Assembly: GCF_032062105.1 (NCBI RefSeq)
Contig: NW_026938483.1
Location: 1 to 64,000, forward strand
Origin: Saccostrea cucullata
Taxonomy: Eukaryota
Length of the DNA stretch: 64,000 nt
Reading direction: 5' to 3'
The position numbers and the translations under genes are program-made. Positions 16,843-60,489 of the stretch are shown piece by piece; position 1 is the stretch's first letter, and every line of letters begins with the position of its first letter. A model generated the notes under the pieces. That model ran no database searches. It had not been told where the DNA came from and saw nothing but the letters and a program-made list of their open reading frames with translations.

Positions 16843-17397
16843 AACAAGAGATGCTTGTAAAACATTTATGCCCCCCCCTCCCCCCAAATTGGAATTTTTC
16901 CAAGTCCAAAAGGGCATAACTCTGTCAAAAATGGTGCGATTGTACCCAAAACAGAAATTGACCAAGATATTTATCTGATAAATCTGTATACCAAATTTCA
17001 TCTCAGTATGTGCAACCTCTGCAAAGAAAATGAAAGGAAACTGCAAATAATTGGAATTTTTTCTAAGTCCAAGGGGCATTACTCTGTCAAAGATGGTGCA
17101 ATCGTACCCAAAACATAACTTGACCTAGATATTTATCTGATAAATCTGTATACAAAATTTCGTCACAGTATGTGCAACAATTGTGAAGAAAATGAACATA
17201 AACTGCAAATAATTGGAATTTTTCTAAGTCCAAGGGGCATAACTTGACCTAGATACTCATGTGATATATCTGTATACCAAATTTCATTTCAGTATGTGCA
17301 ACGGTTGCGAAGAAAATGAACGGAAACTAAGTGGACCGACAGACCGACCGACAGCAGCAAAGCAATATGCCCTCCCTTCTTCGAAGGGGGGCATAAT
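16843..17397 (+). mobile_element. Helentron/HINE with ~162-bp internal repeats
   Basis: AACAAG start; repeats phased at 16889, 17051, 17213; GACC/GACA microsatellite; terminal hairpin gccctccctt-c-ttcgaaggggggc then ataa. Confidence 0.8.
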
Positions 17398-22672: not shown

Positions 22673-24032
22673 TATGTTTCATTATCAGGAAGAACATTAA
22701 AATAACAAAAGGTTGTGATCTGAGGACTTTTAAAACAAGATTCTTGAATACTCTGCATTGTATCTCAATTTAAAATTGACTGCATAGAACATTCTCTTGC
22801 AAGCCAAATTATTTGGGAATAACAACTGATAGTTTCAACACTCTAATGAAAAATTCTGTTTGAAACGGTCTGCTTATGATAAAAACACAATTACTGCCCA
22901 TCAGAATTTCAACAGATTGATAGGAAGAACAGACTACATGTTCTTAGATATTGGTAAACAGGAATTCCAGCATCCTTTTTACATTAATTCCAAGGAACGT
23001 GTGTACATATTCAGTGGGTTTTTTTTTTTTTTGGTTTCATTTAACATTTAGCAATTTATTTAAGATCAGCTATGGAAAAATACTTTCTTCTATTAAAGTG
23101 AAGGAGACAACTCTAATTATTAACATTAAAAGTAGTGTAGCAATTTGTATCCAGTCTTAAAATCTACTTGTTAATTTCAATCTAACACAAGAATCTAACA
23201 TTTTATACAAAAGTCATGAATATGAGTAACCACTGTAACAGCTCAAAATTGAATGTAACTAAATGTAAAATGACTTGGATTTGAAAAAAATATGATTTTG
23301 CAGTATGTTTAAATATATGTTATACTGTTGCACTACATTTCTTGAGAAGATATATTGAATATTTTCCATGTGATTGTCTACACTGTATTAGAACTTTATC
23401 CCATATTTGGTCCAACTCTCTTCATGGTTAACATTTGTTTAGGAATGTTAGCCTCTATTACCTAGGGATTGATGATTAAGTTGTTCAGAAAAAACCATAC
23501 AGATTCATATAATATAAACTTCAAGTCTACCATAAACAATGTTTAAAGGCTTGATGCAAGTATTTTTTTTATATCTACAATACAGATAAAGTTTTTAAAT
23601 AACTTTCATATACTTGGCTGAAAAAGAAATTTCTAAGGCAGAAATACAAAAAAATATTGAAAAAAAGTGAAAATTTGGCACTTTTCCAAATTATTCCCCA
23701 TAGGGTCCAATAGTAATATTTGAACTTTTGAGATGGCCCTCTCAGAAATCAGGATGGTAAACATTCCATTTTTAATCTTAAAACAATAAATTTATAAGAA
23801 AAATTAATTCAAGAAAATTTATCAAAATCTCTAGGGTAGAAATAATTAGACTTGGCCTCGTTTTATTGAGATTCTAAAGTTAGACATTACACAGTCAAAT
23901 TAATGTGTATGTAATCTATACAAAATCAAGATGTTAACAACACAATATTAAATGTGACTGTGTTTAATATCAAAAAATTCAATAAAAAACATATCAAAAA
24001 AATATAAAAGTATATTGCACAAGCAGGTCTTA

Positions 24033-35525: not shown

Positions 35526-38500
35526 TTAGAATCCCTGCCAATCACTGTGTGCGTCTGAATCCTCGTCAGTATCTACCTTGTAACACTTGATTCCATTCTT
35601 CAATGCTGGAGTCCCTTTTCCTTTACCTTTAACGAAAAAACCATAAGCATTAATAATTAACTGGCACTCATACATTGTAATGAGGACATAACAAATAATA
35701 CAAAATATATTTATCATCGCGTGTTTAATTCCTTACAATCTGGCTTGTTACAATTTTTAATTTCTTCTGTTGGTCTTTGCTGTCTATTGCCTGTATTTAT
35801 CATTTTTGACTTTAAATCACCTAGAACTCTTTAGTTTGTATAGCAAACTTTATTCTCTTCTTTCGGTCTTTGTGGTATATATCTATCATTATGTGTTATA
35901 TTACCTAGAACTCTGGCATGTATAACAATCTTGAGTCTTGTCTGTTGGTCTTTGCTGTATATATTTATCATTTTGTTTTATATTACCTAGAACTCTGGCA
36001 TGTATAACAATCTTGAGTCTTGTCTGTTGGTCTTTGCTGTATATATTTATCATTTCTGTCAGCAGTTTCTCACGATGAGCATTAAAATGCAGCACCAGCT
36101 CATGTCCCTTACCTACAAGTGTATTATGTGAAAAATAAACAAGAGATGTACTTGAAACATTTATCCACCCTTTACATCTTCTTCAAAGAGGAGCATAAAA
36201 TCATACAATTTTCTAAAAATGATCATTGACCAAAAATGCAGAGCAACAAATTCGTAAATGATAAAAATACATGTACATTATGTAATTCTCATTCCCTAAT
36301 AAAAGGGAGACAATATGAAAACTACTGATAAGCCACATAAGATATTCAACATATAAGCATATGTAGTACATGTTTATCCTTATAATCAAAACTTTGTGGA
36401 AAAAAAAAACAAAACTGCCCCTACCATCTTCTGTAGGAGTGACTTTCTGGATTTCGACATGGAGGTTTTCCCTTTTATCATAATCAACCTCCTCTCCCAG
36501 ACTATCACTGACACAGAAACAGACCACGTAGTGATGGTGGACCTGTAGAAATCCCAGGTGGACGTCCGCCTTACCCTCACTCTGCTTCACGTGAATCTCC
36601 AGATTATGGTCCTTCAGCTGTTCTGCCTCAAAATGGACATGGTCTTTCCCATGGTCTTTGCAGTTGGAAGCTGGAAATCAGATTTAATACAGTGTTAAAT
36701 AAAATATGTATATCATGTATATTATATACAGTCAAAGCTTGTTCATAGACCAAGATTAAACTTTGAGATACCTGAGGATTCAAGATGTTAAGGTTAAAAA
36801 TCATATTAGAGAAACAATGGTTGTGACTTCCAAATCACTTCAAAACATCCCTGATTATCTCTGGTATTATACTGATAAGACATTACTGTTCAAAATGACA
36901 AAATTCAACTGTACATGTAAACATTATCAAAAAGTATAGCAATTCTAACAACATACAACATGTGTATCACAAATGACATGTGAACATTAATTGTTCCTAT
37001 ATATGGAAGTCCCCATCTTTAGAGTACCTGGTAGTAAATATACCAGTAATTAAATCAAAAGTGAATTCATGTGAATTATGTGACATTTAGATAGTGTTTT
37101 ACTCAAGAACTATTTGTGTATATTCTTTTTTTTTGCATGTTATGCAAGCATGGACTAAAATATGCAATTTTCAAGACCAGAAAAAAATATCCAGCATGTC
37201 TGAAATGTATCTCAAACAAGTGTGCTTGCAATTAAGTAGGTCAAGGTGAAAAGATAAAATGCATATTGTAACTTTTGCCAAGGTATGGTTATTTTGCACA
37301 AGATATATTTTGAATTATAAAAACAAATTCAGAATTGTTTCATGTCTTTTTTCACTAAAAGCAGCAACTTCATTTAAGTGTGACTACGGATTTTGCTAGG
37401 GTTTACAAAAACTTACTGTAAAATCACATATTTTCAAGGGGTCATAAATTTATGGGTTTCTCAATACCTTGGAAACATCTATATTTAACCCCCACAATAA
37501 TCAGTGATTTCATAGTAGTTGAACTACATATTTCTTGTGCAAATAATAGACACCAGAACACAATACAAACAGAACAATCACATGACATAGGAACACAATC
37601 CAAACAGAACAATCAAATGACACCAGAGCACAATCCATACAGAACAATCACATGACAACAGGACACAATCTAAACAGAACAATCACATGACATCAGAGCA
37701 CAATACAAACAAAACAATCACATGACAACAGGACACAATCCATACAGAACAATCACATGACAACAGAACACAAGCCAAACAGAACAATCACATAACAACA
37801 GAACACAATCCATACAGAACAATCACATGACAACAGAACACAATCCATACAGAACAATCACATGACACCAGAACACAATACAAACAGAATAATCAAATGA
37901 CATCAGAACACAATCCATACAGAACAATCACATGACACCAGAACACAATCCAAACAGAACAATCACATGACACCAGAACACAATACAAACAGAACAATCA
38001 CATGACACCAGAACACAATCCAAACAGAATAATCACATGACACCAGAACACAATCCATATAGAATTATCACATGACAACAGGACACAATCTAAACAGAAC
38101 AATCACATGACCACAGAACACAATACAAACAGAACAATCACATGACAACAGGACACAATCCATACAGAACAATCACATGACAACAGAACACAATCCAAAC
38201 AGAACAATCACATGACAACAGGACACAATCCATACAGAACAATCACATGACAACTGAACACAATCCAAACAGAACAATCACATGACAACAGGACACAATC
38301 CATACAGAACAATCATATGACAAGAGGACACAATCCATACAGAACAATCACATGACAACAGAACACAACCCAAACAGAACAATCACATGACAGCAGAACA
38401 CAACCCAAACAGAACAATCACATGACAACAGAACACAATCCAAACAGAACAATCACATGACAACAGAACACAATCTAATCAGAACAATCATATGACAAAA

Positions 38501-38970
38501 GATCAATCACATGACAACAGAACACAATCCAAACAAGAATACAACACTACAAATTGATAATAATGAGTATGAAAGAATGATCAATAAATGAAATGAAATA
38601 ATGAATTTTTTTCTTAAGTTGTTTACCATTTACATGATCTAATTTGTACTAATAAAATTATGACTATGAACAAATTTTGAAAAAAAAAAAAATAAATAAA
38701 TGTACAGACAGAACGATGTGCATCCAAATCTCTGATTATACAGTTATAGGGGCATAACAAGGGTTTGTCACCCTGTGACATTTATTTGCTTAGATTTTCA
38801 TTTTTTTAACGTTTAAATAAAAGAAGGAGCCAACAAAATACTATAAATTCTGCATATCTCATACACTACTTCAACTAAAGAGGCTACATGCATGAAATGA
38901 TGTATCCTACGATAGTAATGGGAAAAGATAATTAACTTCACTTACCAGGTTTCTCCTGAATTGTTTCCAT
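35526..38970 (-). CDS. ADISSP: Adipose-secreted signaling protein / UPF0687 C20orf27 homolog, 4 exons, 165 aa
   Basis: Exons 38970-38946, 36670-36425, 36112-35987, 35626-35526 (all introns phase 1; 498 nt). Motifs HVHFE, VHLGFLQVHHHY, FNAHREKLL, IHARVLGKGKGTPALKNGIKC and C-terminal DSDAHSDWQGF match my recollection of C20orf27. Confidence 0.88.
36729..36911. mobile_element. Tc1/mariner-type MITE remnant
   Basis: TA|cagt ... actg|TA ends; related fragments near 26670-26730 and 51172-51260. Confidence 0.5.
37548..38535. repeat. 35-bp minisatellite, ~28 copies, in ADISSP intron 1
   Basis: Unit gacaacagaacacaatccaaacagaacaatcacat. Confidence 0.95.
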
Positions 38971-39595: not shown

Positions 39596-42500
39596 ATGGC
39601 GACGGCGTCAGAAAATGATTGCCTTAATGATCCAAACTTTGCAGTAATATGCAATTTTTTGGACCGCTTTGGTGAAATAATAGGTCTTGGTGATATATCT
39701 TACACAGATCTCCAAACATGGCTGGAAGACACGAAGCATGGTCCGTTGGAAATTAATTTTTTTGTATTGTTTACATCATGAACAACAAAATATCTTTGTT
39801 TATCTTTTGTAATTACTGCACTGCCTATCAATTCAAATCATTATTGCATTAACGAATTTGACTCTTTCGTTTTCGTAGTTTGCTGTTCAAATGTAACACT
39901 TTTACCAGTTACGCTTTTCTTCAAGCATTTGAGAGAAATCATGAAAACAAAGAGCATATAATGAATAAATATTGAACTTAATCAGAACTTTATGCATATA
40001 TACCATTCGTTTTGAACACATAAACTTTATATTTCTTGATTGAACAAATACATTTTTATTTAGAACAAAATTATGATTATCCATAATTCAATATTTAAAC
40101 TGAATTTGTTTTGCAGTACCCTCATTTTTAGTCGATTTGCATGTGAAACTTCTAAGAAGAATGGGGAAAAGTTCAGTGTCGACTGACAAATGGGAGCGAT
40201 ATGTCATTAAGGTAGAACATTCATTATAATGTCGTATTAGGTATATGCTCATGGAAAGATCCATTTTGACATTTATATATACAGTAAAACTTGTTTAGTA
40301 CTAACACGGATATTGTGAATTCATGGATATAGCAAGTTATCTTTGATCCCCAGCTATATAGATTGAACAAATTTCTTAAACGGATATAATAAATTATGGA
40401 TATAGCAAAGTAATTTCATACAAACATGGCTATTGCAAATTCACGGATATAGTGAAGTTATCTTTGATCCCCAGCTATATAAATTGAACGAATTTCTTAA
40501 AAAGATGTAACGAATTATCACGGATATAGCGAAGTGATTTCATAGGTCCCAGTGACTTTGTTATAACCGAGTTTTACTGTATTCCTTATCAATAGCAAGC
40601 AAGCAAACGAGTGTCATGCTTCCCCAATCTCCATGGCTCTATTTATTTAAAAATTATCATCATGTAACATACTAAAGATCTATTACAATTCACTTCATAT
40701 AACCATTGACACATAATTCGAAATGCACTTAGTATATGCCTTGAACCAGATATATTATCTTAAAATACTTGGTATAAATTTCCAGCTATTGTATACTTTA
40801 TGATTTATGGATTCTTTTTATTCCTTTGTTTAGTTCATACACACCTACTCCAGTGTTGATGCCTGGGAGGTAGAGAGATTTGGATACAAGCATTGCAAAA
40901 TAGCAACGAAACTAACAATCTTAAAGGTATGTTTACTGTACTAATAAAGATTAATTCTGCAGATAAAGAGATTATTCAATAGAGGTAATTTATAAGAGAC
41001 TGGTGATTTTGTATTGATATAGTAACTTTCCAATATGGAATTGATAAACACGTAATTTTTGTATGATATTTAAGAAATTAAAATGAAGATTCATTGTAAA
41101 TGGCTAACAGATGATTAATTTAATTTAGAACCTCCTTGAGAAGCAGTTTGACTTCAACTCAAAGTTTAAAGAACAGATAAATGCCAAGCCTGCTGAGGAT
41201 ATGAGGTTTGAGCCACTTGGTCGAGATAGAAATGGATTAGCCTACTGGTATCTCATTGTAAGTAACGAGCATTCTTAGAAAAAAGCCAAGTCTACAATCT
41301 GTCTAGGATATTTTTGTAATATAGTGAAAGTAAGATGGACTTCCTAAGCAATTGCTGAAAAGCTTTAAGAAAATCTACCTGATCATAATAATTCTTTTGG
41401 TGTTTTATATGACTTCCTTTAAATAGAAAAAAAAGTTTGGGATTTAAACTACTTTTGACAGTGAATTGATTCTAAAATTTCATGATTTACTCTCTAAACT
41501 TTGAAATTTTGTATTGAACTAAAGTGGATCATGTATTGGTATATAACCCTCTTTATGGTTGTTTGTTTACGCAGGATAAGGAGTTCAATGTCCGCGTGTA
41601 CAGAGAAGATCAGGATGACATTGACGCAGAAACCTGGGAAGTTGTTTGCAAGTAAGAAATGAAAAATAACAGACATATCATAAAAATAAAACCATAGGGT
41701 CAATAAGTAAGCTATGAAAAATAGCCCATATGTCATAAATACATCTGTGATTAACATATTTTCAGGCATTACAGAAGTAATATAACTTTAATTAACTTAT
41801 AATCTCCCTCACTTCATTTGTCTGATTACAGATTTATCATACTTGAATGATACCAAGAGACATCACATAGGAAAGCCATTCACTTCAACATTAATTATTT
41901 TCAGCATTTTTTAGCATGTACATGTATATATACCAACATGTGCATCACAGCACTTATTGACACATGTATCATCTGACAAACTCAACAGTGTTCCAGCTAG
42001 GATCTGAAAATGGAGGGGTGCAAGAGAAAGGCACTTTTTTGCGACTTGCCGTTAATTTGTCGCGAGCTTTTGTTACATAGGCATATCTCATCACTTCACC
42101 GTTATAAAAATGAATTACTTCAAATATCATTAATTTAACCTTATTGATTTGAAAGATAATTACATAAACACATACTGATAAACTCATTTAAAAGTATATT
42201 TATTAGCTAAGTAATTTAAACATTTAAGAATTATAATTTCAATTAACTCTTTTCCCCTTAGACCTTTCCCTCCTTTACCCCTTAATGACGACTTTTGACG
42301 CCTAGCCCCCAACCCTTAATGATGACTTTTGACGCACCTGTATTTCATTGTTGAATTGACTTGAAATTACCGCTTGTTTACAAAATATCAGAGCACAGGT
42401 GGCCACCTGCAGGTTAACAATAGATGATTGCATCATACTACAGTTAGAAATCACGTGATTTACCTGTGTAAACAAACAATAGAATCTTGGAAAGTCCCAC

Positions 42501-45500
42501 CAAAATTCAAAATGGCGGACTGTTACATACGATGTTTTTTGAGCATATAACTCAGTAAATACGCAATATTTTCTTATCCAGTAAAGCATTACATGAAATT
42601 CGAGCTATAAACTACCTATTTCTTGAAAGGTTTGAAAATTATAATGATCTATATGTGTAATATACTCCAACATAAGTTATGAAAATTCTGTGAAGTTCGG
42701 GACCGCGCAGTGCCGATTTCGTTACCTGCTTCTCACAAATTCAGAAGATACCTTCCATTTTACACATATTTATAAATGTAAAGGTGTAGAAAATAATTAT
42801 TTTAATAGAATTGGATCATTAAAGTATCCAAAAACGTTCAGAAATCAAGTTTTAGGATGCAAGTCTGAAAATTTGTCGGCGAGATAATCAGATTGACATT
42901 GAAGAAGCACTACAATTTATTGATTTCTGAGTAATTAAACTTATAAAATTGATAATAAATAATAATTTAACCATCAATTATATCATCACACATATTCTTT
43001 ATTTATACAGGCAATTTTGGCTTATTAAAGCCGTTTTACATGTTGAAAATATCTATTTTTCTATTTACACCTGCTTTTACCTGAATTATTTTTTAACAGA
43101 AAATTCCGATCTAAATTATGTAAAAAGATTTGAAAAATTTAATTTATTACGAATACAATGATATATAATACATACCGGTAGTATAAATGAAATATTTTGA
43201 CCCTTAATAGTTCAGTTTTAAACTGCACTCCAATTCTTCTAAAACGCTCTAAGGGGCAGCCAGGCAAACACTCTAAGGATATGGCCAGTGCGTCAAATCG
43301 TGGCATTAAGGGGTAAAGAGTTAAAGATCATCTTAGGATAAGTGTTACTTTTCTTCCATCATTTTCAATCATGTATTGCTTCAAATATTTGAATATTAAT
43401 AGCTAGTCCATGATTTGTTGTATGAGATATACGTCTCTTTCTACATATTTTGGAGGGGCACGTGAATGTAGGATTTTATATATGCTTGATTAAATTTTTT
43501 ATTAGTGTTTTATGAAATTAGATAGATTTTAAATAAAAAAACTAATTAAAAAACATTCTGCTCAAAGTTCTACTTTCAACTTCCCGTGCTGAGCAAGGGA
43601 ACTTGTCTTTTGCATGTATATGTCGTACTTTAAATAATGTAAACTTTTATATGTAGGGGTAATGTAACGTTTTTTGTAGCAGTAATGACCATGTAGCGGT
43701 AATGAAAATTTTTAAAATATAACGGTAATGATACGCACCCAATTGAATGTTGGGACCTGTACAGTATACAGGTACTGTAATGCGAGTTCATTACGTAATC
43801 GTTTATGGCAGGAGGTGTGAATTGTTGATAGGCCTCAGGTATTCTGCTTTGGCACACATTAATTATTTTAATGAGTGAAAAGGACAGTCAGAATGATACA
43901 GGACACAAACAAGGGACATAGGGACGCCTGCTAGGGGCACAGGGGTGCACTGATTTGAGGGCGAGGCGCGGTGCCTCTCCATTTCCCTCTAGCTGGAACA
44001 CTGCTCAAGGAACATATTAAAACTCACCCAAGCAGAAAATAATTACCTGCATTTCATTTTCCTTTTTGCATTAAGATGAGGGGATTATGGATTATCTGTT
44101 TTGTTTATAAGGAACAGGAATGACCTGGCTGAGTTGATTGACTCGCTGGAGGATCAGATCGCTGGTAATGAGGTCAAGGAGGACAGCGAGTCCGAGGCTG
44201 GTAAGTCAGGGTACGACAGTCAACCAGGTATTGTTCTGGGTACGACAGTCGACCAGCTAATGTCCTGGGGAGAAAAAGGCCATAAGGCAAAAGAAGATTG
44301 AAAATTAAGAATATTTCTGTTCATGTACTGCAGATAATAGAATAGTGTGTGATTTTATTTTCAGATACCTATTATATTTGATAAAAATAAGTTTATGGCA
44401 ATCAGCGTCAATATTTGATAGGGTTATGCATGTACATACTTGTATACTAATGAACCTGATCGCTATGTAAATCTCTTTTTGATAAAGTTGTACGTTCATG
44501 AATACTTATGAATATGATCCAATTTTTACATTAAACAGTATCATTGACAGAGAACACAAATGGTGCAGTCAAGAAAGAAGAGAAGGTGGATTCAGCTGAG
44601 GAGGAGGTGAACGGTTCATCCACCGTGAAGAAGGAACCAGATAAGATGGACGAAGTAGACGGAGCAACGGAAGAAAAGGATGATAACACAGAGGAAAAGA
44701 AAAATGTTGACGCAGTAAAATGTGAAAGTAAGGACCCAAAACAGAAAGTGAAAGTAGAGGTCAAAAGTGAAGATTCTGTACAGGAGGAAAAGAATGTCAA
44801 GATGAAAGAAGAACCTCATCAAGAAGTGAAATTAGAGAATTCTGTAAAGGTTGAAGAATCTTCTACTAAAGAGGAGAAAATTAAAGATAAAGAAATTAGT
44901 GTTAAAAGTGAGATCCCTGAAGAACAGGGAGGAAAAGAGGAAAAGGGGGGTAATAATGAAGACACTGTGACAGTGAAACTGGAAAAAACAGATATTAAGG
45001 AAGAAAGGCCCACAAAGATAGACATGCAAGATAGAGTGGAAGAGGCAGAAATTAAAAAGGAAGAATCCACAGATGTGGATGCATGTACAATGAGTAAAGC
45101 AGAAGAAGCAGAAATCCCAAAGGAAAATGAATTGGCAGATACCTCACACAAGGGAAAGGAGGGGGCACCTGATGAAGACGACCACAGCAAGGGGGGAGAG
45201 ACAGGAGAAACTAAAACTGAGAAATCTGTAGAGGCTAGTGCTTCAGGTGATGAACCTTTGGAGACTAGTGCTTCAGGAGTTAAAGATACTGAACCAGAAA
45301 ATAGTAAAACAGATGGAATGAAAAAGGGAGAGCAATCAGAGGTAGCGACCTCAGTGAAAGAGACCAGGGAAACTGACACATCAGGTAGCAATGTCTCAGT
45401 GAGTAGTAATGATAAAGCAGTGGGTGGGGAGAACAGGGAACAGGAAAGGTTAACTGGGACTGATACGGTAGAATGCACTGATAATAAGACAACTGAGGCT

Positions 45501-48500
45501 GATAAAACTGTCAAGTGTGATTCTGTAAAAGAAAAGGGTGATCCTGAAGATCGAAATTCTAACAATATTGAACCTAATGAAGCAAACAATCACAGTAAAA
45601 GTAGTACTGTCACTGAAAATAAGACAGAAATTGATACTGAAAAAGAAGATATTCTGAAAAAAGATGATAGTGAATTAAAGTTAAGTCCTGAAAAAAATGT
45701 GAATGACACTTATAATGAGAGTAAAGAAAAAGCACCTGAAGAGGAAAGCCACAAAGAAGAAGAAAAAGTGAAGTTAAAGGACAATAAAGATTTGAAAGAT
45801 TCAGGGAAGGAGGATAAATCAGGGAATATCCCTGAGAAAAGTCCAGCTACAAAGTTGTCTGGTGATGGTGAGGTAGAATCTCCAAACTCAGAAAGTAAAG
45901 AAACACAGAAAACCGAAAATAAGGAAACCAAAGAAAATACACAGAGTGATGTCTCTGCAGAAATTACAGAGAGAGAAACACAGGAAAGTACAGAAAATGG
46001 AGAAGCTGGAACAGTAGATGCCAATAAGAGAGAAAGCAACATAGAGGTTACATCAGAGGAGGCAGGCAAAGGTAAACATGATCAAACATCAGAGAAGCCT
46101 GACCTTACATCCAATAAGTCTGAGGTTTCAACAGAGAAACCTGACCATACAACAGATAAGTCTGATATTACATCCAGTAAGTCACAGCAGTCTGCAGAGA
46201 AACCTGACCATACAACAGATAAGTCTGACGTAACATCCAATAAGTCTGAGGTTTCCACAGAGAAACCTGACCATACAACAGATAAGTCTGATATTACATC
46301 CAATAAGTCACAGCAGTCTGCAGAGAAACCTGACCATACAACAGATAAGTCTGAGGATTCTACAGAGAAGAAAAAGGAGAAAAATGATGATGACAGTGAA
46401 AATAAATCAGCTGAGAAAACAGAAGAATCTACTAAGGAATCAAAAGAAGCGCATTCTGAGAATGATTCTAATGCTCTGAAACTGAAAGAGAAAACAAAGA
46501 AACCAAACCTTAAAGGGGGCCGTAAGAGAGGGATAGAGTACGAAGAATCAGCTGAAGATTCCCCCGTAGAACCCAACTCCAAAAAAGCCAAGGATGGCAA
46601 GAAAATCATTCCACGGGGAAAACGCAGGACTCCAAAGAAAGTGGACTCCTCTTCTGACAGCGATGATGTACCACTGAGTAAAATAGGGGCCAAGAATGGG
46701 GACTCCAACAGAAAACGCCCCGAGTCATCCCCCAATGTACCCTCCAGGAAAAGTAACAGACCTGTCAAGGTAATCAAAGAAATTACATTCCATTTGTAGG
46801 TTCTCTTGAACATTTCTTAGCCCATTACACGTAATAATTATTATAGTAACAGAGTTTCAAATTTCTAGATCAGTGTTGTTAGCTGATACCTTATATCTCC
46901 TTTCAAATACTTGCAATACTTTTTATATATGAATTGAATTTATTTCAAAGCTAAAATCAGTATGACAGCAATTTCTTTACAATTGCAAAATCAGTAAAAT
47001 AAAATTAAGATCTAATTCTGTCCAAGAACTATATAGTTGTTTAATGGTGCTAACTAATCGATAATATGTTTACAGAAGAAGAAAATTTCCAGTGAAGAAG
47101 AGGATGAGAGTCCAAAGAAAACAAAGTCTAAACGAAAAAATAATATGGAGAAAGGGAGTGATAGTGAGGAGGAAGGGAGCCCAGCACCAAAGAAAAACTC
47201 CAAGAAATCAAAACCACCCACCAAAAAGACAAAGAAACAAGAACCGGACTCTAGTGATGAAGATGTCCCACTCAAAAATACGAAAAATGCTAAAAACAAA
47301 CCAAAACCGAAGTCTGAGGAAGCTGTTCCTAGCGACGAGGACGACCAGGGGAGGAGGAGGAGTGCTCGCGTGAGGAACATGAGACAGAGAAAGGAGCCAA
47401 CACCTGAGCCCTCGAGCTTCGAGGAGGACAATGTGGACAGCGAGTTTGAGATCGGCTCAGAACAGGAAACTACGGACGACGAATTTACTCCAACCAAAGG
47501 ACGCAATGCACAAAGACAAGAAGCCCGTAAACGTAAGTTAGAATCTACAGGTATGAAGTTTTTAAGTGCTATGGCAGAACTCCAGAAATTTTTTTCAAAG
47601 CAGTTGGTACATTAAGATTTTTTTTTCTCAAAGATGACAGGAATATAGAAATTCTTTTTGATGTCTTGGCATTCATGATGCCAAAGATGTCTGTTCCTTC
47701 CTTAAATTTTTTTAAAAATCAAAACCTTTACAGAAATGTCCCCTTTCTGTTTGTAGGTCAGTTAGAAGAAGACGAAGCAGAAGAAGATATTCCTAATGAT
47801 ACACCGTGCTGTAAATGTCAGAAAACTCATCAGCCAGAATGGGTAAAACATTTACCTTTTGTATTATAAATATAGTCAACACAAGCAAGCTACGAAAATA
47901 GTAACATAGCAATAGCATATACTAAATTTTCTTTAAGATTCAGTATGTGTTAATTATGTGTTTCGTTGATCATTATACCGTGGCTTTCTACACTGCCTGT
48001 TTTAAACCTCCACAGAAAATTAGATTTCTGTTTCATTTTTACTGTGTGCCTGTCTTAGATCACCACTGATAATTAACTCTGTTTCAGTTATTATTGTGTG
48101 ATAAATGTGATGCAGCCTTCCACACCGCTTGTCTCCGACCACCACTTATGATTATTCCGGACGGAGATTGGTACTGCCCGCCCTGTGAACATGTGAGTCT
48201 CGAACCTTAAATTGTTAATAACGAAAAGTTTCCAAGTGTTGTTTCCATAGTAAATGTCATATAAATATTGTATATATACCTCAGAAATAATTCTAAAAAA
48301 AAGAATTCAGAGTCATGGACATATCGTAACAGTTGCTTATTGAGATGAACACATAGTACATGTAGTTGATCATTGAATACATTTCAGAAATCTCTGGTCA
48401 CTCGGTTACAAGAAAATCTTAAAGACTTAGATACCAATCTAAAGAAGCATGAGAGAATTATTAAAAGGTAAACCTGAAGGAAATTCAGATGCATAAGTAT

Positions 48501-51500
48501 CTCTGCCATTTGAATTTTTTTTTATAATATTCTTGATGAGAAGAGCAGAAAAAAAATGAATTTAACTTGTCTATTAATCTTCTTTTTTCATTTATTAACT
48601 CTTGTGTCAATAATTTTGACATGATGAGGGACAAACTGAGAATTAAATACACATTTTGATATACTCTCATTCACATGTTAATTGTAAAAACTGTCCAAAA
48701 TGTCATAAAGTATACAAATTAGTAGCATTTTTGTTTATCTTATGGAGATTGTCAATGGAGAATAATAATCTAAGCTGTTATTTATAAAGCTGTAAAAAAA
48801 TTTATTTTCCAGAAAACAGAGGCTAGCATATGTTGGAATTAGTTTAGACAACATTCTGAAAGAGGTAAGTCCTGTTTTGTTCTGTTTTATTCAGTAATGG
48901 TTTATATCTGTACCTCAACTTTAGGTTCATCATCCAAATGTTAACAAGTAAAACTTAACACATGATTTTCCAGAGGTAATGCACACAGTTTAAGCATAGA
49001 TTTGTTTATACCTTTTGGGCACAAATTGTGCCGAAACGTTTAAAATATTATATAAATGAAAAAAAAGATATTAATCCATTGAGAGTTATCCCCCTTATCA
49101 ATGTAGGTTTACCTTAATGAAGCCCCTGATTTTTACCAGTTCTTTCCTTTGTTTATAATTTTAATGAACTGTTTTTAGGAGTACAAGGAGAGGAAGGAGA
49201 ATATAGCCCCAGAGGAGGAATACGAGAGTGAGGAGGAAAGCCGCGACAGTTTTAACCCCAAACCCCGCAAAAGTAAATACATCAAACGCTCGTGTAGACA
49301 GCGGAACACCATCAGCTACAAGTTTGAGGACTTTGATGATCTGATTGACAAGGCCATTAAACAGGAGGTGGAGGAGGTTAAAGAGTACAAGAAACATAAC
49401 TACGGTGGGTAATATAGGGGAGTCCAGAAACATAAGTATAACGATGGTAGTCAAGACACATAACTATGATGGGTCTTATAGGGGAGTCAAGAAACTATGG
49501 CTGGTGGATTAGTGTAGTCAGAATTGTATGTAAAAAGTACATTTTTAGAATAAGTGTAATATAAAAAATGAACTGTTTACATGTATGTTCATATATTTGC
49601 AATTTCAGGTGTAATTTGCAATGCCATTCAGCACATTACAAAGTTGCATTATTTTTGCAACTGCAGACAAGCAAACCACACAAGAGATTTGTGAATTTCC
49701 TTTCTGACAAAGGATTTGTTCTTTTTCCAGGTCGCAGTCGAGGTAAGGACATGGCCAATATTTACGAAGCTGAGGGTCGTGAATACGTACCCTCCGATGA
49801 AGAGAAATCTGACAAGCCACCACCAGTGGTCAGCAGGAAAAAGCGAGCCCGACGACTGACGACACTGGACAGCGACGATGACAATGACGAGGGAGATGAA
49901 AGTGAAGAGTTCCATCTCTCAGAGTAAGACCTGTCTGATGAAATTCTGTGTCAAAGTTTGATCTTTATCATTTTTTGAAATAAATCAACAGAATAACAAA
50001 ATTGTACTCACCTGGAAGTACCCATGAACTAGGTACCAGTACCTCTGCTCTCCTTCAAAAAGTACTGATTAGAAAAAATAACAGTCTACAGCTGACTTTA
50101 AAATCCACACAGATACAAGTATTACTTGAAATTGGTCAATCAGCTTGCATTAGTGTTATGCTTATCCTTATCATAAACAAAGGGAAACACCCATTGTCTT
50201 TCATTTGATTCTTATCTGAAATGTTTGACAAATTTCATCTTAGGGTTGTTGGAAGTTATGATTGCCTACTTTCTGTTTGATAGTGAGACTGTGTCTGAGA
50301 TAACTCCCTACTTTCTGTTTGACAGTAAGACTGTGTCTGAGATAGTTCCCTACTTTCTGTTTGACAGTGAGACTGTGTCTGAGATAGTTCCCTACTTTCT
50401 GTTTGACAGTAAGACCGTGTCTGAAGTTATAACCCCATACTTTCTGTTTGACAGTGAGACCGTGTCTGAGGTTATAACCCCTTACTTTCTGTTTGACAGT
50501 GAGACCGTGTCTGAGGTAGTTCCCTACTTTCTGTTTGACAGTGAGACCGTGTCTGAAGTTATAACCCCTTACTTTCTGTTTGACAGTGAGACTGTGTCTG
50601 AGGTTATAGCCCCTTACTTTCTGTTTGACAGTGAGACCGTGTCTGAAGTTATAACCCCTTACTTTCTGTTTGACAGTGAGACCTTGTCTGAGATAATTGT
50701 CTACTTTCTGTTTGACAGTGAGACTGTGTCTGAGATAATTCCCTACTTTCTGTTTGACAGTGGATATAACTCCCTACTTTCTATTTGACAGTGAGACCGT
50801 GTCTGAGGTCCCTGAGGAGGAGCAGGAGGACAGTGAGGATGATGAGGATGAGGTGTCAGACTACAGCGAGGACGGAGAGGGCTGGAGGTCATGTCGAAGG
50901 TCATCCAGGTACGGGAAACCCACCAGGAGGAGCTCACGCAAACGAGGACGACACTCCATCTTCAAAGACTTTGGTAAGAGATCTTTCATTTGTTTTTAAC
51001 TCAGCTCAATGAAGTCAATATGAGATAATGCTATTTCCCCCCACCCACTCCTTACCCCTGAAGCCTTGGCTTTGGTGTCAGGGTTGGCATCATACTTACA
51101 GTTTTAAAGTAAATTTCCTGCCATTTACATGTAATTATTAGAGAGTACATCATGACCCAGAACCAAGGCTATACAGTTAAAATTTGGTATCTCAAACATT
51201 GATATTTGAATACTGTGGATACGTCTAAGTGAATTAGTAGTAGTCCTAATACTTATTCTCTAAAGCATTGATACTTGATAAATCTTTTCAAATGAAATCA
51301 AACCTCTGTTTACTTTAAAGCATTGATACTTGATAAATCTATTTAATGCTATCAAACCTGACATTTCTATTTATAGTTGTTGATGAGGATGAGGACAGTG
51401 AGGACAACAGGAGGACGGCCCGGAGGTCAGTGAGGAAGAGGGCGACCTATAGAGACCCGTCCAGTGAGGAGGAAGAGGAAACAGAGGAGGAGACGGAGGA

Positions 51501-54500
51501 GAGCTTCGACAGCGAAGATCTGTGTTCCGAGGACAGCGACACCAAAAACAAAAAGGGCAAACAGAAGAACGACATCACAAAAAAGAAGAAGATTGAAAGT
51601 AATTCAGAGACCGAGGAGGAAAGTGATGAATCTCGTACAAAAAAGAAATTCAAACCCTCAAAGAAAAAGGCAAAAAAGAAAGTAGAAGAAAGTGAAAGTG
51701 ATTCTGAGGATGACCACCAGAGAAGGTCACGAAGGAATGTGAAGAAAATTGACTTCAAATCACTTATGTTGTCTGAAACTGAGAGTGAAGATGGAGGGAA
51801 AAGCAGCAAAAAGAAGAAGAAGATTTCTAGCAGTGAGAGTGATGTTAGTGATGAGACGGGATCAGAGAGTGAGAATGAGGAGGTCGTGAAGAAGAAGAAG
51901 AACGTCATCCGAGACGAATCCTCAGGAACGGATGAATACGAACCCGAGGAAAAGGAAAGCAAAGAGGATAAGAGTGAAGCCAATGATAAAAATGAGGATG
52001 CAAAACCAAAGGACAAGGTGGAGGAAAAAATTGATGAAACGTCTGTTGACAGTTCTGTTGTAAATAATACATCTAATAACAATGAACAAACTGAAAATGC
52101 AGGTGTGATGAAATCTCAAGAAACACCACTATCTCATCCAAATGTTCCTCTTACAGTCACTAGTGAACATTCAAGTGCCCCTGTGAATAGGAGATTTGAG
52201 GATCAAGGCATTCCTCCAAATATGCCTCCTCAGCAGGAAAACATGTTTCCAAACTTTCCAAATATACCTCAAGTCCAACAGAATGTTGGCTTTCAACCGC
52301 CTGGACAGCAGTTTCCAAACCAAAGACCACCTTTCCCAGGAATGGAACGACCTAGTTTTCATCCTCAGCCTGGTCCACTGAAAAGCCCCCCTCATGTACC
52401 CAGCAATCCCCCCAGTCATCCACATATCCACAATCAGCGACACATATCAAGTCCATCCCAGGGGATGTCAAGTCCCCCTCCATTCCAGAACCGAATGGTC
52501 AGTCCACCACATCAGATGACCAGTCCTTCCCACAATCAAGCCCCTCCCCACAATCAGATGAATCAATGCATGCCCTACCCCTCCAATCAGATGGGACTTC
52601 GTTCTGGTGACCCTCAGCGCTTCCCTATAGGTTCCCCTCCTGTTCCATCGTCCCAGGCCACTCAGATGCCTTTTGATTTAAGGATGAATCCTAACAGAAT
52701 GCCCATGGATTTCAGAGGACCACATCCAAGGATGATGAATAGCTCAAACTCGTATCCACAGTATGGACCCAACATTGGAAATGTTCCACCAGGATCCCAA
52801 GCTACAAACTTTCAAAACCAAATGAGAATGCATGGTCCTATGCAGTCTAGGATGGAAGGCCCAGGACAAATGGAACCTGTAACTTCTTCACCAGGTGGCC
52901 CTTTGACATCACTTGGACAAATGGTTGCACCTGGATATCAGAGTCAACCACAGCAAATGCCTAGACAAGGTGTCCCTCCAAATTCCATGAATATGGGAAT
53001 GCCAAGACATAATATGCCACAAACACAGCAAAAGCCTCATGGTATGCCCCCAACTACTGCAACTCCAAACACTGGTATGCTGCCAAATACTCAAGGACAG
53101 CATATGCCTCCAAACTTGCCCATGCATAACATGCCACATTCTGGTTCTCAAGGCATGGGATTCAATATGCCAGGTCAGGGGGGAATGCCACCTGCCTATC
53201 CAGGGCAAACTCCCTCCTTCAACAGCCCTAATCAAGGCACAGCACCACCATCAGCTGAAACTCCAAAGACAAAATCTAAGCGAGGCAGACCTAAAGGCAG
53301 CAAAACAAAAAAGAAAAAGGATGCTCCAATAGAAAATGATGATTCTTCCAAATCTCCAGGGTCTTCTCCCCAAGTAGACCCTCCAAAACTTCCCTTCCCT
53401 GCCTCACACACAGGAGAAATGGATCAGAGACAGATGCATCCAGCGGGTGTTCCAGAAGGTCTGCAGAGACCAATGATGCCACCTGGTGGTCCAGAGGGGG
53501 TACATAGACCCATGATGCCTGGAAATGAAAATAGGTCAAAGCCCCCACCATATGTTCATAGAAATGAAGCAAGTCAGAGACCTCCAGTCAGCCATGTTCC
53601 CCCAAGTGATTTTGGTAGCAGACCTCCTGATTCAAATACATCATCGACTGAAGCAAGTCAAAGAGTAAAAGATAGTGAAAAACGTAAAAATTCAATAGAC
53701 AGTGATAAAGGGCCTGTGGATGAGACCAATCCAAGCCCAGCCAGTAATGTAGTAGTACAAAAAACCCCAACAAGTGAAGGCAGCAGCAAACAGGCAGGAG
53801 AAACTGAAGTTAGTAACAGGTCAACTAGTCATAGGCCACCACCAATGGGTTTAATGGGTCAAAGACCACCTGGTCCAGAAATTGGTCATAGACCGCATGC
53901 TCCAGAAATTGGTCATAGACCACATGCTCCAGAAATTGGTCATAGACCACATGCTCCAGAAATTGGTCATAGACCACATGCTCCAGAAATTGGTCATAGA
54001 CCACATGCTCCAGAAATTGGTCATAGACCACATGCTTCAGATATGGGCTCACGGCTGATGGTTCCCACTTCTGGCCAGATGGGTCAGCCTCCTATGCCAC
54101 CACAGTTCAGCGAGATGGGTCAAAGACCAATTCATCCAGGCATGATGCCTCCTAGAATGATGGACCCTAGAGGCATGATGATGTCACAAGGGCACCCAGT
54201 GAGAGCACCAATGCCCTATCCAGGGTATCATTATAACAGGGAGCACTTTGGTATCAATGGACACCCAGCGTCGGTACACTCTTCTCTACAGGATCCTGGG
54301 TTTCCAGGCATGAACCCACCTATGATGAGCTCACCTCATCAGAACCCAATCATGCACCCCAGTCAAGTGGCCCAACCCTTGGGAGGAGGACGGGGTTTTA
54401 TGATAGACAATCTGTTAGAGAAAAACCAAAAATCTGGGATGTCTTCATTCTCTGAAAATATGGAGGAGGGAGGTTCTAATGCTGAGGAAAGCAAAGCGGA

Positions 54501-55009
54501 CCCACCACAGATGGAGCAGGAATACGGGTCAGGTTTCCAAGGTGACCAGGAGGAGGAGGGGGTGTCAGACATTGCTGACATTGTCAAGTAAGTCAGGACT
54601 CTATGTTTACAGGAAAATGTATTGCAAGTGACAGTAATTGAACAGTTATTTATAGTTTGGTTTGGAAAGGCAGACTGTCTCATCTTGAATAGTACTTCAA
54701 TCATTTTGCCATTTATTGCTTTGTTCGATAGATGGTTGCTACCATTCATAATTGTGAGTCAAGAAAACAAATAAAGAATCTCTCCTATTTCTTTTATGAA
54801 AAACAAATCTGACAGAGAATGTTTTTACGTTTTTGCCATTTTTTGAACAAAATCATCATAAATTGAGATAAAACACATATCTGTTTTGTTTGAAACTAAA
54901 TGAAATGAGATTGATATGTAGATAGAAAAGTGTAAGCTATTAAGGTATTCTGTACTTACAGAGATTTGTAATGAATGTTGTTTTTGTTTATAGGTGTTTT
55001 AAGGCATAG
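39596..55009 (+). CDS. RSF1: Remodeling and spacing factor 1 (DDT/WHIM N-terminus, PHD finger), 17 exons, ~2494 aa
   Basis: Exons 39596-39740, 40117-40211, 40834-40926, 41129-41257, 41575-41651, 44112-44200, 44539-46769, 47076-47550, 47757-47842, 48088-48192, 48388-48467, 48813-48864, 49179-49404, 49731-49923, 50792-50973, 51377-54587, 54994-55009; phases join into one ORF. Motifs [105 protein letters not shown]. Confidence 0.93.
40282..40579. mobile_element. Tc1/mariner (pogo-like) MITE with internal ~120-bp duplication
   Basis: TA|cagtaaaact ... agttttactg|TA; repeated cacggatatagc motifs. Confidence 0.75.
41986..44003. mobile_element. Non-autonomous hAT-like (hAT5-type) element in RSF1 intron 5
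   Basis: Perfect 15-bp TIR cagtgttccagctag / ctagctggaacactg; 5-bp TSD ctcaa (41981-41985, 44004-44008). Confidence 0.85.
42247..43320. mobile_element. piggyBac-like MITE nested in the hAT-like element
   Basis: TTAA on both flanks; TIR ctcttttcccctta / taaggggtaaagag; repeated subterminal cccttaatgacgacttttgacgc. Confidence 0.75.
44539..46769 (+). CDS. RSF1: RSF1 exon 7 (acidic E/K-rich disordered region)
   Basis: 751-aa ORF bounded by acceptor aaacag|TA and donor AAG|gtaatc, in phase with flanking exons. Confidence 0.9.
46087..46360 (+). repeat. Coding tandem repeat, 63-nt unit alternating as a 126-nt dimer ([11 protein letters not shown](I/V)TS(S/N)KS...)
   Basis: Visible in the RSF1 exon 7 translation. 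Confidence 0.9.
50262..50807 (+). repeat. 42/45-bp tandem array of a duplicated RSF1 splice acceptor plus exon start (13 copies)
   Basis: Unit ccctactttctgtttgacag|tgagaccgtgtctgag; acceptor G at 50283, 50325, 50367, 50409, 50454, 50499, 50541, 50586, 50631, 50676, 50718, 50760, 50791. Confidence 0.95.
51377..54587 (+). CDS. RSF1: RSF1 exon 16 (acidic/basic region, then P/Q/G/M-rich low-complexity domain with AT-hook)
   Basis: 1081-aa ORF; acceptor ttatag|TT, donor AA|gtaagt; KRGRPK at ~53278-53295. Confidence 0.9.
53875..54036 (+). repeat. Coding 27-nt repeat (PEIGHRPHA)x6
   Basis: Near-perfect ccagaaattggtcatagaccacatgct repeats. Confidence 0.95.
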
Positions 55010-58909: not shown

Positions 58910-60489
58910 TCAATATTTGTTGTGTTTAGACGAACATTTTATGACAGTTTTGAAAGCCCTTAGAAAGTCCTTATTTGAGTAGGCATAAAGAACAGGATTT
59001 AGGGTAGAATTAATGTAGGTCATCCAAAAGAAAAAGGTGTACAGCCAATCAGGGACCAGAGCGGGTTCCCAGGCGTAAATATCCCATGCCACGTAGAACG
59101 GGAACCAGCAAATCAGGTAACTAGTTATCACGTAGGTCAAAGTTCGGAAAATCCTGTGCTCTCTGTTACCATGGTTACTGGATTTAACCGTTACCGCTTT
59201 ATCTGATGACGTGGACGAAGCCCAACTGGATGGCGGGGGCGTGGTCGAGATAATGGACAGCGTGGGCTCGGTTAATAAAGATCGGTCTCTTGTTGTGCAA
59301 TCAACCATTAAGTGAGTGCTTGGTTTGACGTTGATAGTGGTTGGCCCGCTGCCTCTGTGACCTACTTTTTTAGACCGATTCTTCATCACCAGGTAAACTT
59401 TCAGGTAAGCGACGACGATCAGCAGACAGGGGATGTAGTGGCCGATGATATCGACGACGATGATGAATTCGCGGTTGTCGGAGGGCTCCCAGATGCACTT
59501 GTTGACCTCTTGATGCTTTAGACGGTCACCGATAAAGGGTGGTGTCCAAATGATGAAGACACAAACCCTGGAAGTGTGAAAAATTACAATGGTTATTCAA
59601 GGAATAAAAAGTATTTAATGACGAAGTTTTAAATTATTCTATAGAAATGATCATATAACATGTACACGATATAAAGCCCTTCTCTATTCAACCTTCAGAC
59701 ACATGAAGATCTGTTGTCCCTCACTATTCTGAGAAAAGTGGGGCGGTATTCTAGAAGTTTATTCCAAAAACGTCGTCGCCTATGGAAAACTTTGGCCAGT
59801 TCAACAAAAACTTAAAAAATTTCAGTAAATTAGAAGTTAAAAATATCTTTAAAGCATATTTAATCCAGCAAATTTTTGTGTAACAATTGGTTTTTCAGAT
59901 TAGAGACTAGTTTTACTAGATTAGTTTGATATAAGCAAAACACAAAATAAGAGCAAAGCAACATACGAACCTCCAAAAACATCAGAGGACGTCTATAGGG
60001 TCAGGAGCCATGGAGGAGTGAGCATCCCCTGTCGACCTGTCACACCCACCGTGTACTCCTTGTCATGATCGGAAAAATAAAAAAAATGACTTACCACACA
60101 ATGGTCAAGATAATGATGTTCTTTCTCTTCCCGTTAATTTGCTTGTACTGCATCGCCCATGTGACAGACCAAAAGCGATCTAATGAGATGGCCACGATTG
60201 TAAAAACACTGGCAAAAGTCATAGCATAGTCAACATAGATCCAGAACCCGCAGATAATGGTCCCAAACGGCCAGTACCCCAGGAGGGTGTCTATCGTATA
60301 AAACGACATGGCGAAGAGGGCCACCAAAAAGTCCGTGACCGCAAGGTTAACAATAAAGTAATTAAAAGGCTGTCTAAGTCTGGAATCTAATGCAAAGGAC
60401 AGCATGACCAAAAAGTTTCCCACGATGGTGACCAACACAATGATAGAAAGCGTCAAAGTGATGAGGATGTTCTTGACCGTCACTTCCAT
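58910..60489 (-). CDS. Class A (rhodopsin-like) biogenic-amine-type GPCR, 2 coding exons, ~350 aa
   Basis: Exons 60489-60095 and 59567-58910 (phase 2). TM1 GNFLV, TM2 NLAVTD, TM3 CGFWIYVDY (D3.32) and LDRFW, TM5 HYIP, TM6 CWFPF, TM7 WMTYINSTLNPVLY. Confidence 0.9.
59935..60075 (-). mobile_element. Penelope-like 3' tail inside the GPCR intron
   Basis: Tail motif begins ~20 nt after the GPCR donor site, sense to the gene. Confidence 0.7.

What the first reader, a model, noticed from the sequence alone, without database searches (positions are those of the whole stretch)
50262..50807. Array of 13 splice acceptors in RSF1: 12 in-frame decoys lead to one premature stop and only the last is productive
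Every unit keeps a pyrimidine tract and YAG, and 11 consecutive spacings are 42 or 45 nt (multiples of 3) with no stops. Splicing exon 14 (phase 2) to any of acceptors 1-12 stays in frame, adds 0-11 repeats of the SETVSE(V)ITPYFLFD type and ends at TGA 50786-50788, because the last spacing is 31 nt. That stop is ~185 nt upstream of the next junction (likely NMD) and removes ~1135 C-terminal residues while keeping DDT/WHIM/PHD. Only the AG at 50791 gives full-length RSF1. Most units also overlap a donor-like ACA|GTGAGA or ACA|GTAAGA, and some have GAG|GT. Hypothesis: a copy-number-tunable poison-acceptor control on a chromatin remodeller, or a strong natural test of exon definition.
Basis: partly seen in the sequence, partly recalled or inferred. 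Interest (0 to 1): 0.8.

Follow-up and report, generated by a model that had tools for sequence, protein, structure and literature searches.

The report
Duplicated splice-junction minisatellite in oyster RSF1
A short stretch spanning one intron-exon border of an oyster chromatin gene has been copied 13 times in a row; the repeat is real, but such splice-site repeats ("mirages") are already described and turn up repeatedly in mollusc genes, so it is most likely harmless repeat growth, not a control switch.

Summary
The array is real: 13 acceptor-like AGs (50283-50791) before exon 15 of RSF1; the window matches Saccostrea cucullata. Only the last AG gives the conserved protein; the other 12 end at TGA 50786-50788. 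It is a tandem duplication of the intron 14/exon 15 border (founder 45 nt, 5-nt microhomology): an acceptor-type "mirage" as in amphioxus BflGb6, akin to human CBS 844ins68. The poison-switch reading is not supported. S. echinata and the other orthologs checked have one acceptor here. 16 of 222 RSF1 splice sites in seven molluscs carry such copies, mostly at different sites (Dreissena: 17 x 55 nt, out of frame), as do 4 of 140 sites in unrelated genes of this genome; both are 1.6-1.9 times intronic background. The 3n spacings reduce to one founder length plus one 3-nt indel; a premature stop is the default for such decoys (about 85% in simulation). A congener's RNA joins only 49923 to 50792, but no reads of this species were available, so decoy silence is inferred. 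Earlier scan notes found the same kind at other genes of this genome and supplied the name.

The parts
50252..50809 (+). Tandem array of the intron 14 end plus exon 15 start (unit 45 nt = 32 intron + 13 exon, or 42 nt after a 3-nt deletion); 13 acceptor AGs; bounded by a 5-nt microhomology at 50252-50256 and 50805-50809
50252..50760 (+). Decoy acceptors AG1-AG12 (AG ends 50283 to 50760), units 81-100% identical (mean 90%); each followed by at most 16 nt of exon copy
50761..50791 (+). Last spacer, 31 nt (11-nt deletion of the exon copy); holds the tract and AG of the productive acceptor and, in the decoy frame, TGA 50786-50788
50792..50973 (+). RSF1 exon 15 (182 nt), starts at AG13
   Evidence: ortholog peptides, RefSeq model P0044, congener RNA joint 49923-50792
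49731..49923 (+). RSF1 exon 14; phase-2 donor at 49923
39596..55009 (+). RSF1 gene, 17 coding exons, 2488 aa (exon 8 ends at 47532; last exon starts at 54994)
49385..49500 (+). Decayed duplication of the exon 13 donor (same kind of event)
   Evidence: tandem copies in the congener (loose ends at 49390 and 49439)
47960..48110 (+). Decayed copies of the exon 10 acceptor and exon start; a 4-copy 81-nt version stands in S. echinata
35760..36060 (-). 82-nt duplication array of an exon end plus donor in the neighbouring DUF4517 gene (2 intact, 1-2 decayed copies)

Best explanation
A lineage-specific minisatellite seeded on the RSF1 intron 14/exon 15 border (an acceptor-type 'mirage'). Steps: (1) a 45-nt segment, 32 nt of intron plus 13 nt of exon, was duplicated between two 5-nt microhomologies (sequence shown; slippage or template switching inferred); (2) it grew to 13 copies by slippage or unequal exchange, picking up one 3-nt and one 11-nt deletion, with the two end units most distinct (shown; mechanism inferred); (3) only the last copy is followed by the whole exon, so the spliceosome defines exon 15 from the AG nearest its donor and treats the upstream copies as intron (inferred from exon definition, CBS 844ins68 and amphioxus RT-PCR; not shown in this species); (4) rare mis-splicing to a decoy or to 41-125-nt cryptic cassettes always ends in a premature stop and is probably cleared by NMD (stop shown, decay inferred); (5) such arrays are near-neutral and decay, as older copies at exons 10 and 13 show. 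No regulatory role.
For: Single acceptor at this intron in S. echinata, another oyster contig, Mytilus and Pinctada. 16/222 RSF1 splice sites in 7 molluscs duplicated, mostly at different sites, including a 17 x 55-nt acceptor array and a 16 x 45-nt donor array in Dreissena. 4/140 sites in myosin, kinesin and HECT exons of this genome, including a 15 x 33-nt donor array. Background for founding units 4.5% and 1.5%. Unit length is 3n in 3/11 acceptor and 4/9 donor cases; simulated duplications are 3n and stop-free in 15%; 23 of 24 decoys in the other arrays where it could be scored also give a premature stop. Congener RNA in 3 studies joins 49923 to 50792 only. Amphioxus mirages do not disturb splicing (PMC3087553, PMC3902484); the distal site is strongly favoured in CBS 844ins68 (PMC2630376).
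Against: No RNA of this species was served, the congener probably lacks the array or its state is unclear, and contigs drop rare variants. The RefSeq model that picks AG13 likely comes from this same assembly. Decoys score as well as the real site. The tract-plus-AG core is nearly invariant across units (1 of 12 variable columns in the last 17 nt), which is post hoc but could reflect constraint. Human CBS intron 13 and 6-16 donor minisatellites do leak to pseudo-sites (PMC1557585).
Confidence: 0.8

Rival explanations
1. Same origin, but leaky: a constant share of transcripts uses upstream AGs and is lost to NMD, so RSF1 output falls with copy number. A mild mutational load or splicing QTL, not an adaptation.
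For: Decoys match or beat the real acceptor by PWM; intron-centric proximity favours the upstream 3' site under intron definition (PMC9225289); CBS and 6-16 donor VNTRs leak.
Against: Intron 14 (868 nt; 360 nt to AG1) is long enough for exon definition; each decoy carries at most 16 nt of exon; amphioxus acceptor mirages give no aberrant mRNA; RSF1 tolerates such arrays in several species.
Confidence: 0.11
2. One reading: a selected, regulated poison-acceptor array whose copy number and 31-nt last unit tune RSF1 through NMD.
For: All 12 decoys funnel to one stop; the acceptor core is intact in every unit; the 11-nt deletion sits in the last spacer.
Against: Not conserved in the sister species; funnel to a stop is the default; frame pattern needs only two events, about 15% by chance; same arrays occur at many unrelated genes; no coding constraint; no database protein with the repeat peptide (a weak, length-limited blank).
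Confidence: 0.04
3. The array, its copy number or the 31-nt unit is an assembly artefact, or one haplotype of a polymorphic locus.
For: One assembly only; no second haplotype found; no reads of this species. Copy number differs between haplotypes in amphioxus.
Against: 11 of the 12 spacers are distinct sequences, with shared variants and clean 3-nt and 11-nt indels; the flanking CDS has 0 mismatches to RefSeq and no stops; like arrays stand in independent assemblies of other molluscs. Polymorphism in copy number is likely and fits the best explanation; only outright artefact is scored here.
Confidence: 0.04

Closest known systems
Amphioxus 'mirages' (Adh3, troponin C, globin BflGb6 and BflGb9, PGBD5; PMC3087553, PMC3902484)
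   Same: Minisatellite-like tandem copies of an intron-exon border; BflGb6 is the acceptor type (intron 3' end plus exon 5' start); units 81-100% identical; copies keep AG; end units differ from the inner ones; one end copy is the authentic site.
   Different: Oyster, 13 copies of 42-45 nt against 3-6 copies of 150-160 nt in BflGb6; length instability and normal splicing were shown in amphioxus, not here.
Human CBS 844ins68 (PMC2630376, citing Romano et al. 2002)
   Same: Duplicated intron end plus exon start gives two acceptors; the downstream one is strongly favoured and the upstream copy is spliced out.
   Different: Two copies of 68 nt, a polymorphism with tested splicing; here 13 copies and untested.
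Human donor minisatellites F7 IVS7 (37 nt), CBS IVS13 (31 nt), LMNB2, PDGF, 6-16 (PMC1557585)
   Same: First unit spans an exon border and repeats the splice site many times; pseudo-sites are mostly silent.
   Different: Donor side, not acceptor side; two of them leak to the nearest pseudo-sites.
Poison exons and alternative 3' sites coupled to NMD (own knowledge, e.g. SR-protein autoregulation)
   Same: An alternative splice would add a premature stop more than 50 nt before the next junction.
   Different: Those are deeply conserved and regulated; this array is missing in the sister species and no use of the decoys is shown.

Membership tests
Mirage (intron-exon border minisatellite) | Head-to-tail repeats whose unit spans an exon-intron border and includes the splice signal | tested here: met
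   Unit = 32 nt intron + AG + 13 nt exon, 13 copies
Mirage (intron-exon border minisatellite) | The end copy next to the exon is the authentic site; the other copies lie in the intron | tested here: met
   Only AG13 gives the ortholog peptide; congener RNA joint 49923-50792
Mirage (intron-exon border minisatellite) | Minisatellite turnover: diverged units, end units set apart, lineage-specific | tested here: met
   81-100% unit identity, end units carry private variants; absent in S. echinata
Mirage (intron-exon border minisatellite) | Copy number varies between haplotypes or individuals | not testable with these tools
   One copy in the assembly; no runs of this species served
Mirage (intron-exon border minisatellite) | Regular splicing is undisturbed | tested here: inconclusive
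   Only a congener's contigs could be laid; they show the normal joint, but it is unclear whether that species has the array
Regulated poison splice event (AS-NMD) | Alternative junction creates a premature stop over 50 nt upstream of a later junction | tested here: met
   TGA 50786-50788, 185 nt before 50973
Regulated poison splice event (AS-NMD) | Conserved across related species | tested here: not met
   Single acceptor in S. echinata, L017, Mytilus, Pinctada
Regulated poison splice event (AS-NMD) | The alternative junction is seen in RNA and is regulated | tested here: inconclusive
   No joint to AG1-12 in 3 congener RNA runs; no own-species RNA
Recursive splice site (AG|GT ratchet point) | Splicing to the AG regenerates a GT donor at the new junction | tested here: not met
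   Every AG is followed by T; the GT overlaps the AG's own G and is lost on splicing
Intron gain by tandem duplication (Rogers model) | Duplicated AG|GT proto-site lets the extra copy be spliced out without loss or gain of coding bases | tested here: not met
   Using ACA|GT with a later AG drops one base; all such cassettes are 3n-1 and end in a stop

The most novel reading that the evidence does not exclude
Decoy acceptors are used at a measurable rate that rises with copy number, so a length-variable minisatellite sets the NMD-lost share of RSF1 mRNA; since a few percent of splice sites in this and other mollusc genomes carry such arrays, they would form a genome-wide class of repeat-driven splicing QTLs.
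Probability: 0.08. Interest if true: 0.6.

Novelty: new member of a known kind. Interest (0 to 1): 0.22.

Why it matters
As a single locus it matters little: one more mirage. Its use is as a ready-made test of 3' splice-site choice, with 13 near-equal acceptors of which only the last is productive and all errors easy to count under NMD block. The wider point is that mirages, which I found described only for amphioxus and a few human genes, occur at roughly 3-7% of splice sites in the molluscs sampled here. That affects gene annotation, and it offers many natural replicates for exon-definition and intron-gain questions.

Tried and rejected
Second haplotype or paralog in the assembly: none. Runs of this species: none served, best share of words 0.15, so read laying tested only a congener; its DNA contigs leave 49965-50417 empty and put short pieces of uneven depth on 50418-50719, which cannot be read as presence or absence of an array. 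Repeat peptide in the protein collection: no hit (limited to 0.55-1.75 times the query length); Pfam hits to it are below cut-off. RNA structure hiding the decoys: z = -1.29, not significant. Recursive splicing and Rogers-type intron gain rejected on junction geometry. Coding constraint on the units not significant. My first background (share of intron covered by repeats, 5-38%) made splice sites look depleted; the fairer founding-unit background gives 1.6-1.9-fold excess, p=0.04 and 0.17, sites not independent. In one search some 'PTC' calls ran into an intron; one search corrects them (the last Liolophura row there may reflect an unresolved junction and is not counted). My first exon 8 donor (47550) was wrong; RefSeq and congener RNA give 47532. 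Genomic loci of C. gigas, S. cucullata and Mercenaria proteins were not on record. The big protein search was not needed.

Full report
Observation. The window holds 13 copies of a pyrimidine tract plus YAG between 50252 and 50809, with AG ends spaced 42, 42, 42, 45, 45, 42, 45, 45, 45, 42, 42 and 31 nt (TRF 12.8 copies). The motif forms an array nowhere else in the 1.17-Gb assembly, and the region is single-copy. Joining the donor at 49923 to AG1-12 reads 0-11 repeats and stops at TGA 50786-50788, 185 nt before the exon 15 donor; joining to AG13 (50791) gives the peptide found in C. gigas and S. echinata.

Gene and organism. A 17-exon model from 39596 to 55009 is open and has no mismatch to the RefSeq RSF1 of Saccostrea cucullata (P0044, 2488 aa), so the window is most likely that assembly. 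1135 residues follow the junction. Pfam gives a PHD finger and a sub-threshold WSD match before the junction. RefSeq picks AG13, but it was probably annotated on this same DNA and is no independent proof. The spliced model was built only inside scripts; searches went by reference, exon by exon or with stored proteins.

Anatomy. The unit is 32 nt of intron end plus the first 13 nt of exon 15. Its ends fall in a 5-nt microhomology: GAAGT at 50252-50256 in the intron, GAGGT at 50805-50809 in the exon, which reads GAAGT in S. echinata and in four of the units. The 42-nt units lack three bases of the 45-nt unit; the last spacer lacks a further 11. So the 'eleven multiples of three' come from a founder length and one indel. 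Units are 81-100% identical, and the first and last acceptors carry private variants. Changes among units are 5 synonymous and 7 non-synonymous against 26% expected synonymous (p=0.17). The donor-like ACA|GTGAGA is the AG plus the exon's first bases and stands in single-acceptor orthologs too; it cannot act as a recursive site, and cassettes cut at it are all 3n-1 and end in a stop. With a weight matrix from 111 mollusc RSF1 introns the real acceptor scores 6.2, AG2-12 6.4-7.3 and AG1 3.6, so sequence strength does not pick AG13. The array has no unusual RNA structure (z = -1.29).

Relatives. S. echinata (L018), another oyster contig (L017), Mytilus and Pinctada have one acceptor at this intron. 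Yet the same kind of event is common. Of 222 RSF1 splice sites in seven molluscs, 16 have a near-identical copy in the adjacent intron, mostly at different sites. Dreissena has 17 copies of a 55-nt acceptor unit, not a multiple of three, and 16 copies of a 45-nt donor unit. In this genome, 4 of 140 predicted sites in myosin, kinesin and HECT exons are duplicated, one 15-fold, and the neighbouring DUF4517 gene has an 82-nt donor array. Against intronic positions that lie in a founding unit (4.5% and 1.5%) this is a 1.6-1.9-fold excess (p=0.04 and 0.17; small samples, sites not independent). Unit length is a multiple of three in 3 of 11 acceptor and 4 of 9 donor cases. Simulated acceptor duplications are in frame and stop-free in 15%, and 23 of 24 scorable decoys in the other arrays also lead to a premature stop. 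A stop after decoy use is thus the default, not a design. Decayed copies at exons 10 and 13 show the usual fate.

Transcripts. No run of this species was served; the best held 13-15% of the words, i.e. a congener. Its RNA contigs from three studies confirm the junctions of exons 9-16 and join 49923 to 50792 with no joint to an upstream AG. This fixes the ancestral junction but does not test the array: its DNA contigs do not cover 49965-50417, the short pieces on 50418-50719 cannot be interpreted, and contigs drop rare variants. No protein with the repeat peptide was found (weak blank).

Mechanism. Most likely (0.8): microhomology-seeded duplication and minisatellite growth; exon 15 is defined from the AG nearest its own donor, because only that copy is followed by the full exon; the rest is intron, and rare errors go to NMD. 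The origin and the stop are read from the sequence; site choice and decay are inferred from an exon-centric proximity rule for exon-defined exons (PMC9225289), from CBS 844ins68, where the distal of two duplicated acceptors is strongly favoured (PMC2630376), and from amphioxus. Rivals: constant leak that scales with copy number (0.11), regulated poison switch (0.04), assembly artefact (0.04).

Known kinds. Earlier scan notes on other genes of this genome pointed to amphioxus 'mirages'; I checked the papers. BflGb6 carries tandem copies of an intron 3' end plus exon 5' start, 3 or 6 by haplotype, 81-100% identical, with end units set apart, and RT-PCR suggests normal splicing (PMC3087553); Adh and troponin C mirages give no aberrant mRNA (PMC3902484). 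Human donor minisatellites (F7, CBS intron 13, LMNB2, PDGF) are the 5' counterpart, mostly silent, two leaky (PMC1557585). The oyster array meets the three structural features of a mirage; copy-number variation and undisturbed splicing could not be tested. It fails the conservation test of a regulated poison event.

Verdict. Real, correctly described, a new member of a known kind; the regulatory reading is unsupported. Interest 0.22. The most novel reading left open, copy-number-dependent leak acting as a splicing QTL across many mollusc genes, has probability about 0.08.

Noticed in passing
window 35760-36060 (-): 82-nt array of an exon end plus donor in the DUF4517 gene: two intact copies, one or two decayed.
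   Followed up: partly
window 47960-48087 and 49385-49500: Older, decayed border duplications at the RSF1 exon 10 acceptor and exon 13 donor; the exon 10 one is shared with S. echinata, the exon 13 one with the congener, where depth near 10,000 hints at a long array.
   Followed up: partly
L018:14664-14830, 14926-15297, 17022-17193: S. echinata RSF1 has its own border duplications: exon 9 donor x2 (83 nt), exon 10 acceptor x4 (81 nt; the nearest decoy is in frame and open, would repeat 27 aa of the PHD finger), exon 14 acceptor x2 (94 nt).
   Followed up: partly
L078:19942-20662 and 22787-23721: Dreissena RSF1 has a 16 x 45-nt donor array and a 17 x 55-nt acceptor array; the exon 14 acceptor is thus duplicated independently in Dreissena and S. 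echinata.
   Followed up: partly
L067:2854-3350: 15 x 33-nt donor array after a HECT-domain exon in this genome.
   Followed up: partly
window 50971-50973 / 51377: Congener RNA shows two forms at the exon 15-16 joint; they differ in the letters next to the joint and look like alleles, not alternative splicing.
   Followed up: no
window 46074-46354 and 53853-54041: Coding tandem repeats in RSF1 (63-nt and 27-nt units) that are longer than, or absent from, S. echinata.
   Followed up: no
window 7060-8279 and 37549-38502: 108-nt (11 copies) and 35-nt (27 copies) arrays; the first resembles a repeat in S. echinata intron 15; not checked for exon overlap.
   Followed up: no
window 58910-60489 (-): Two ORFs that read like pieces of a rhodopsin-family GPCR.
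   Followed up: no
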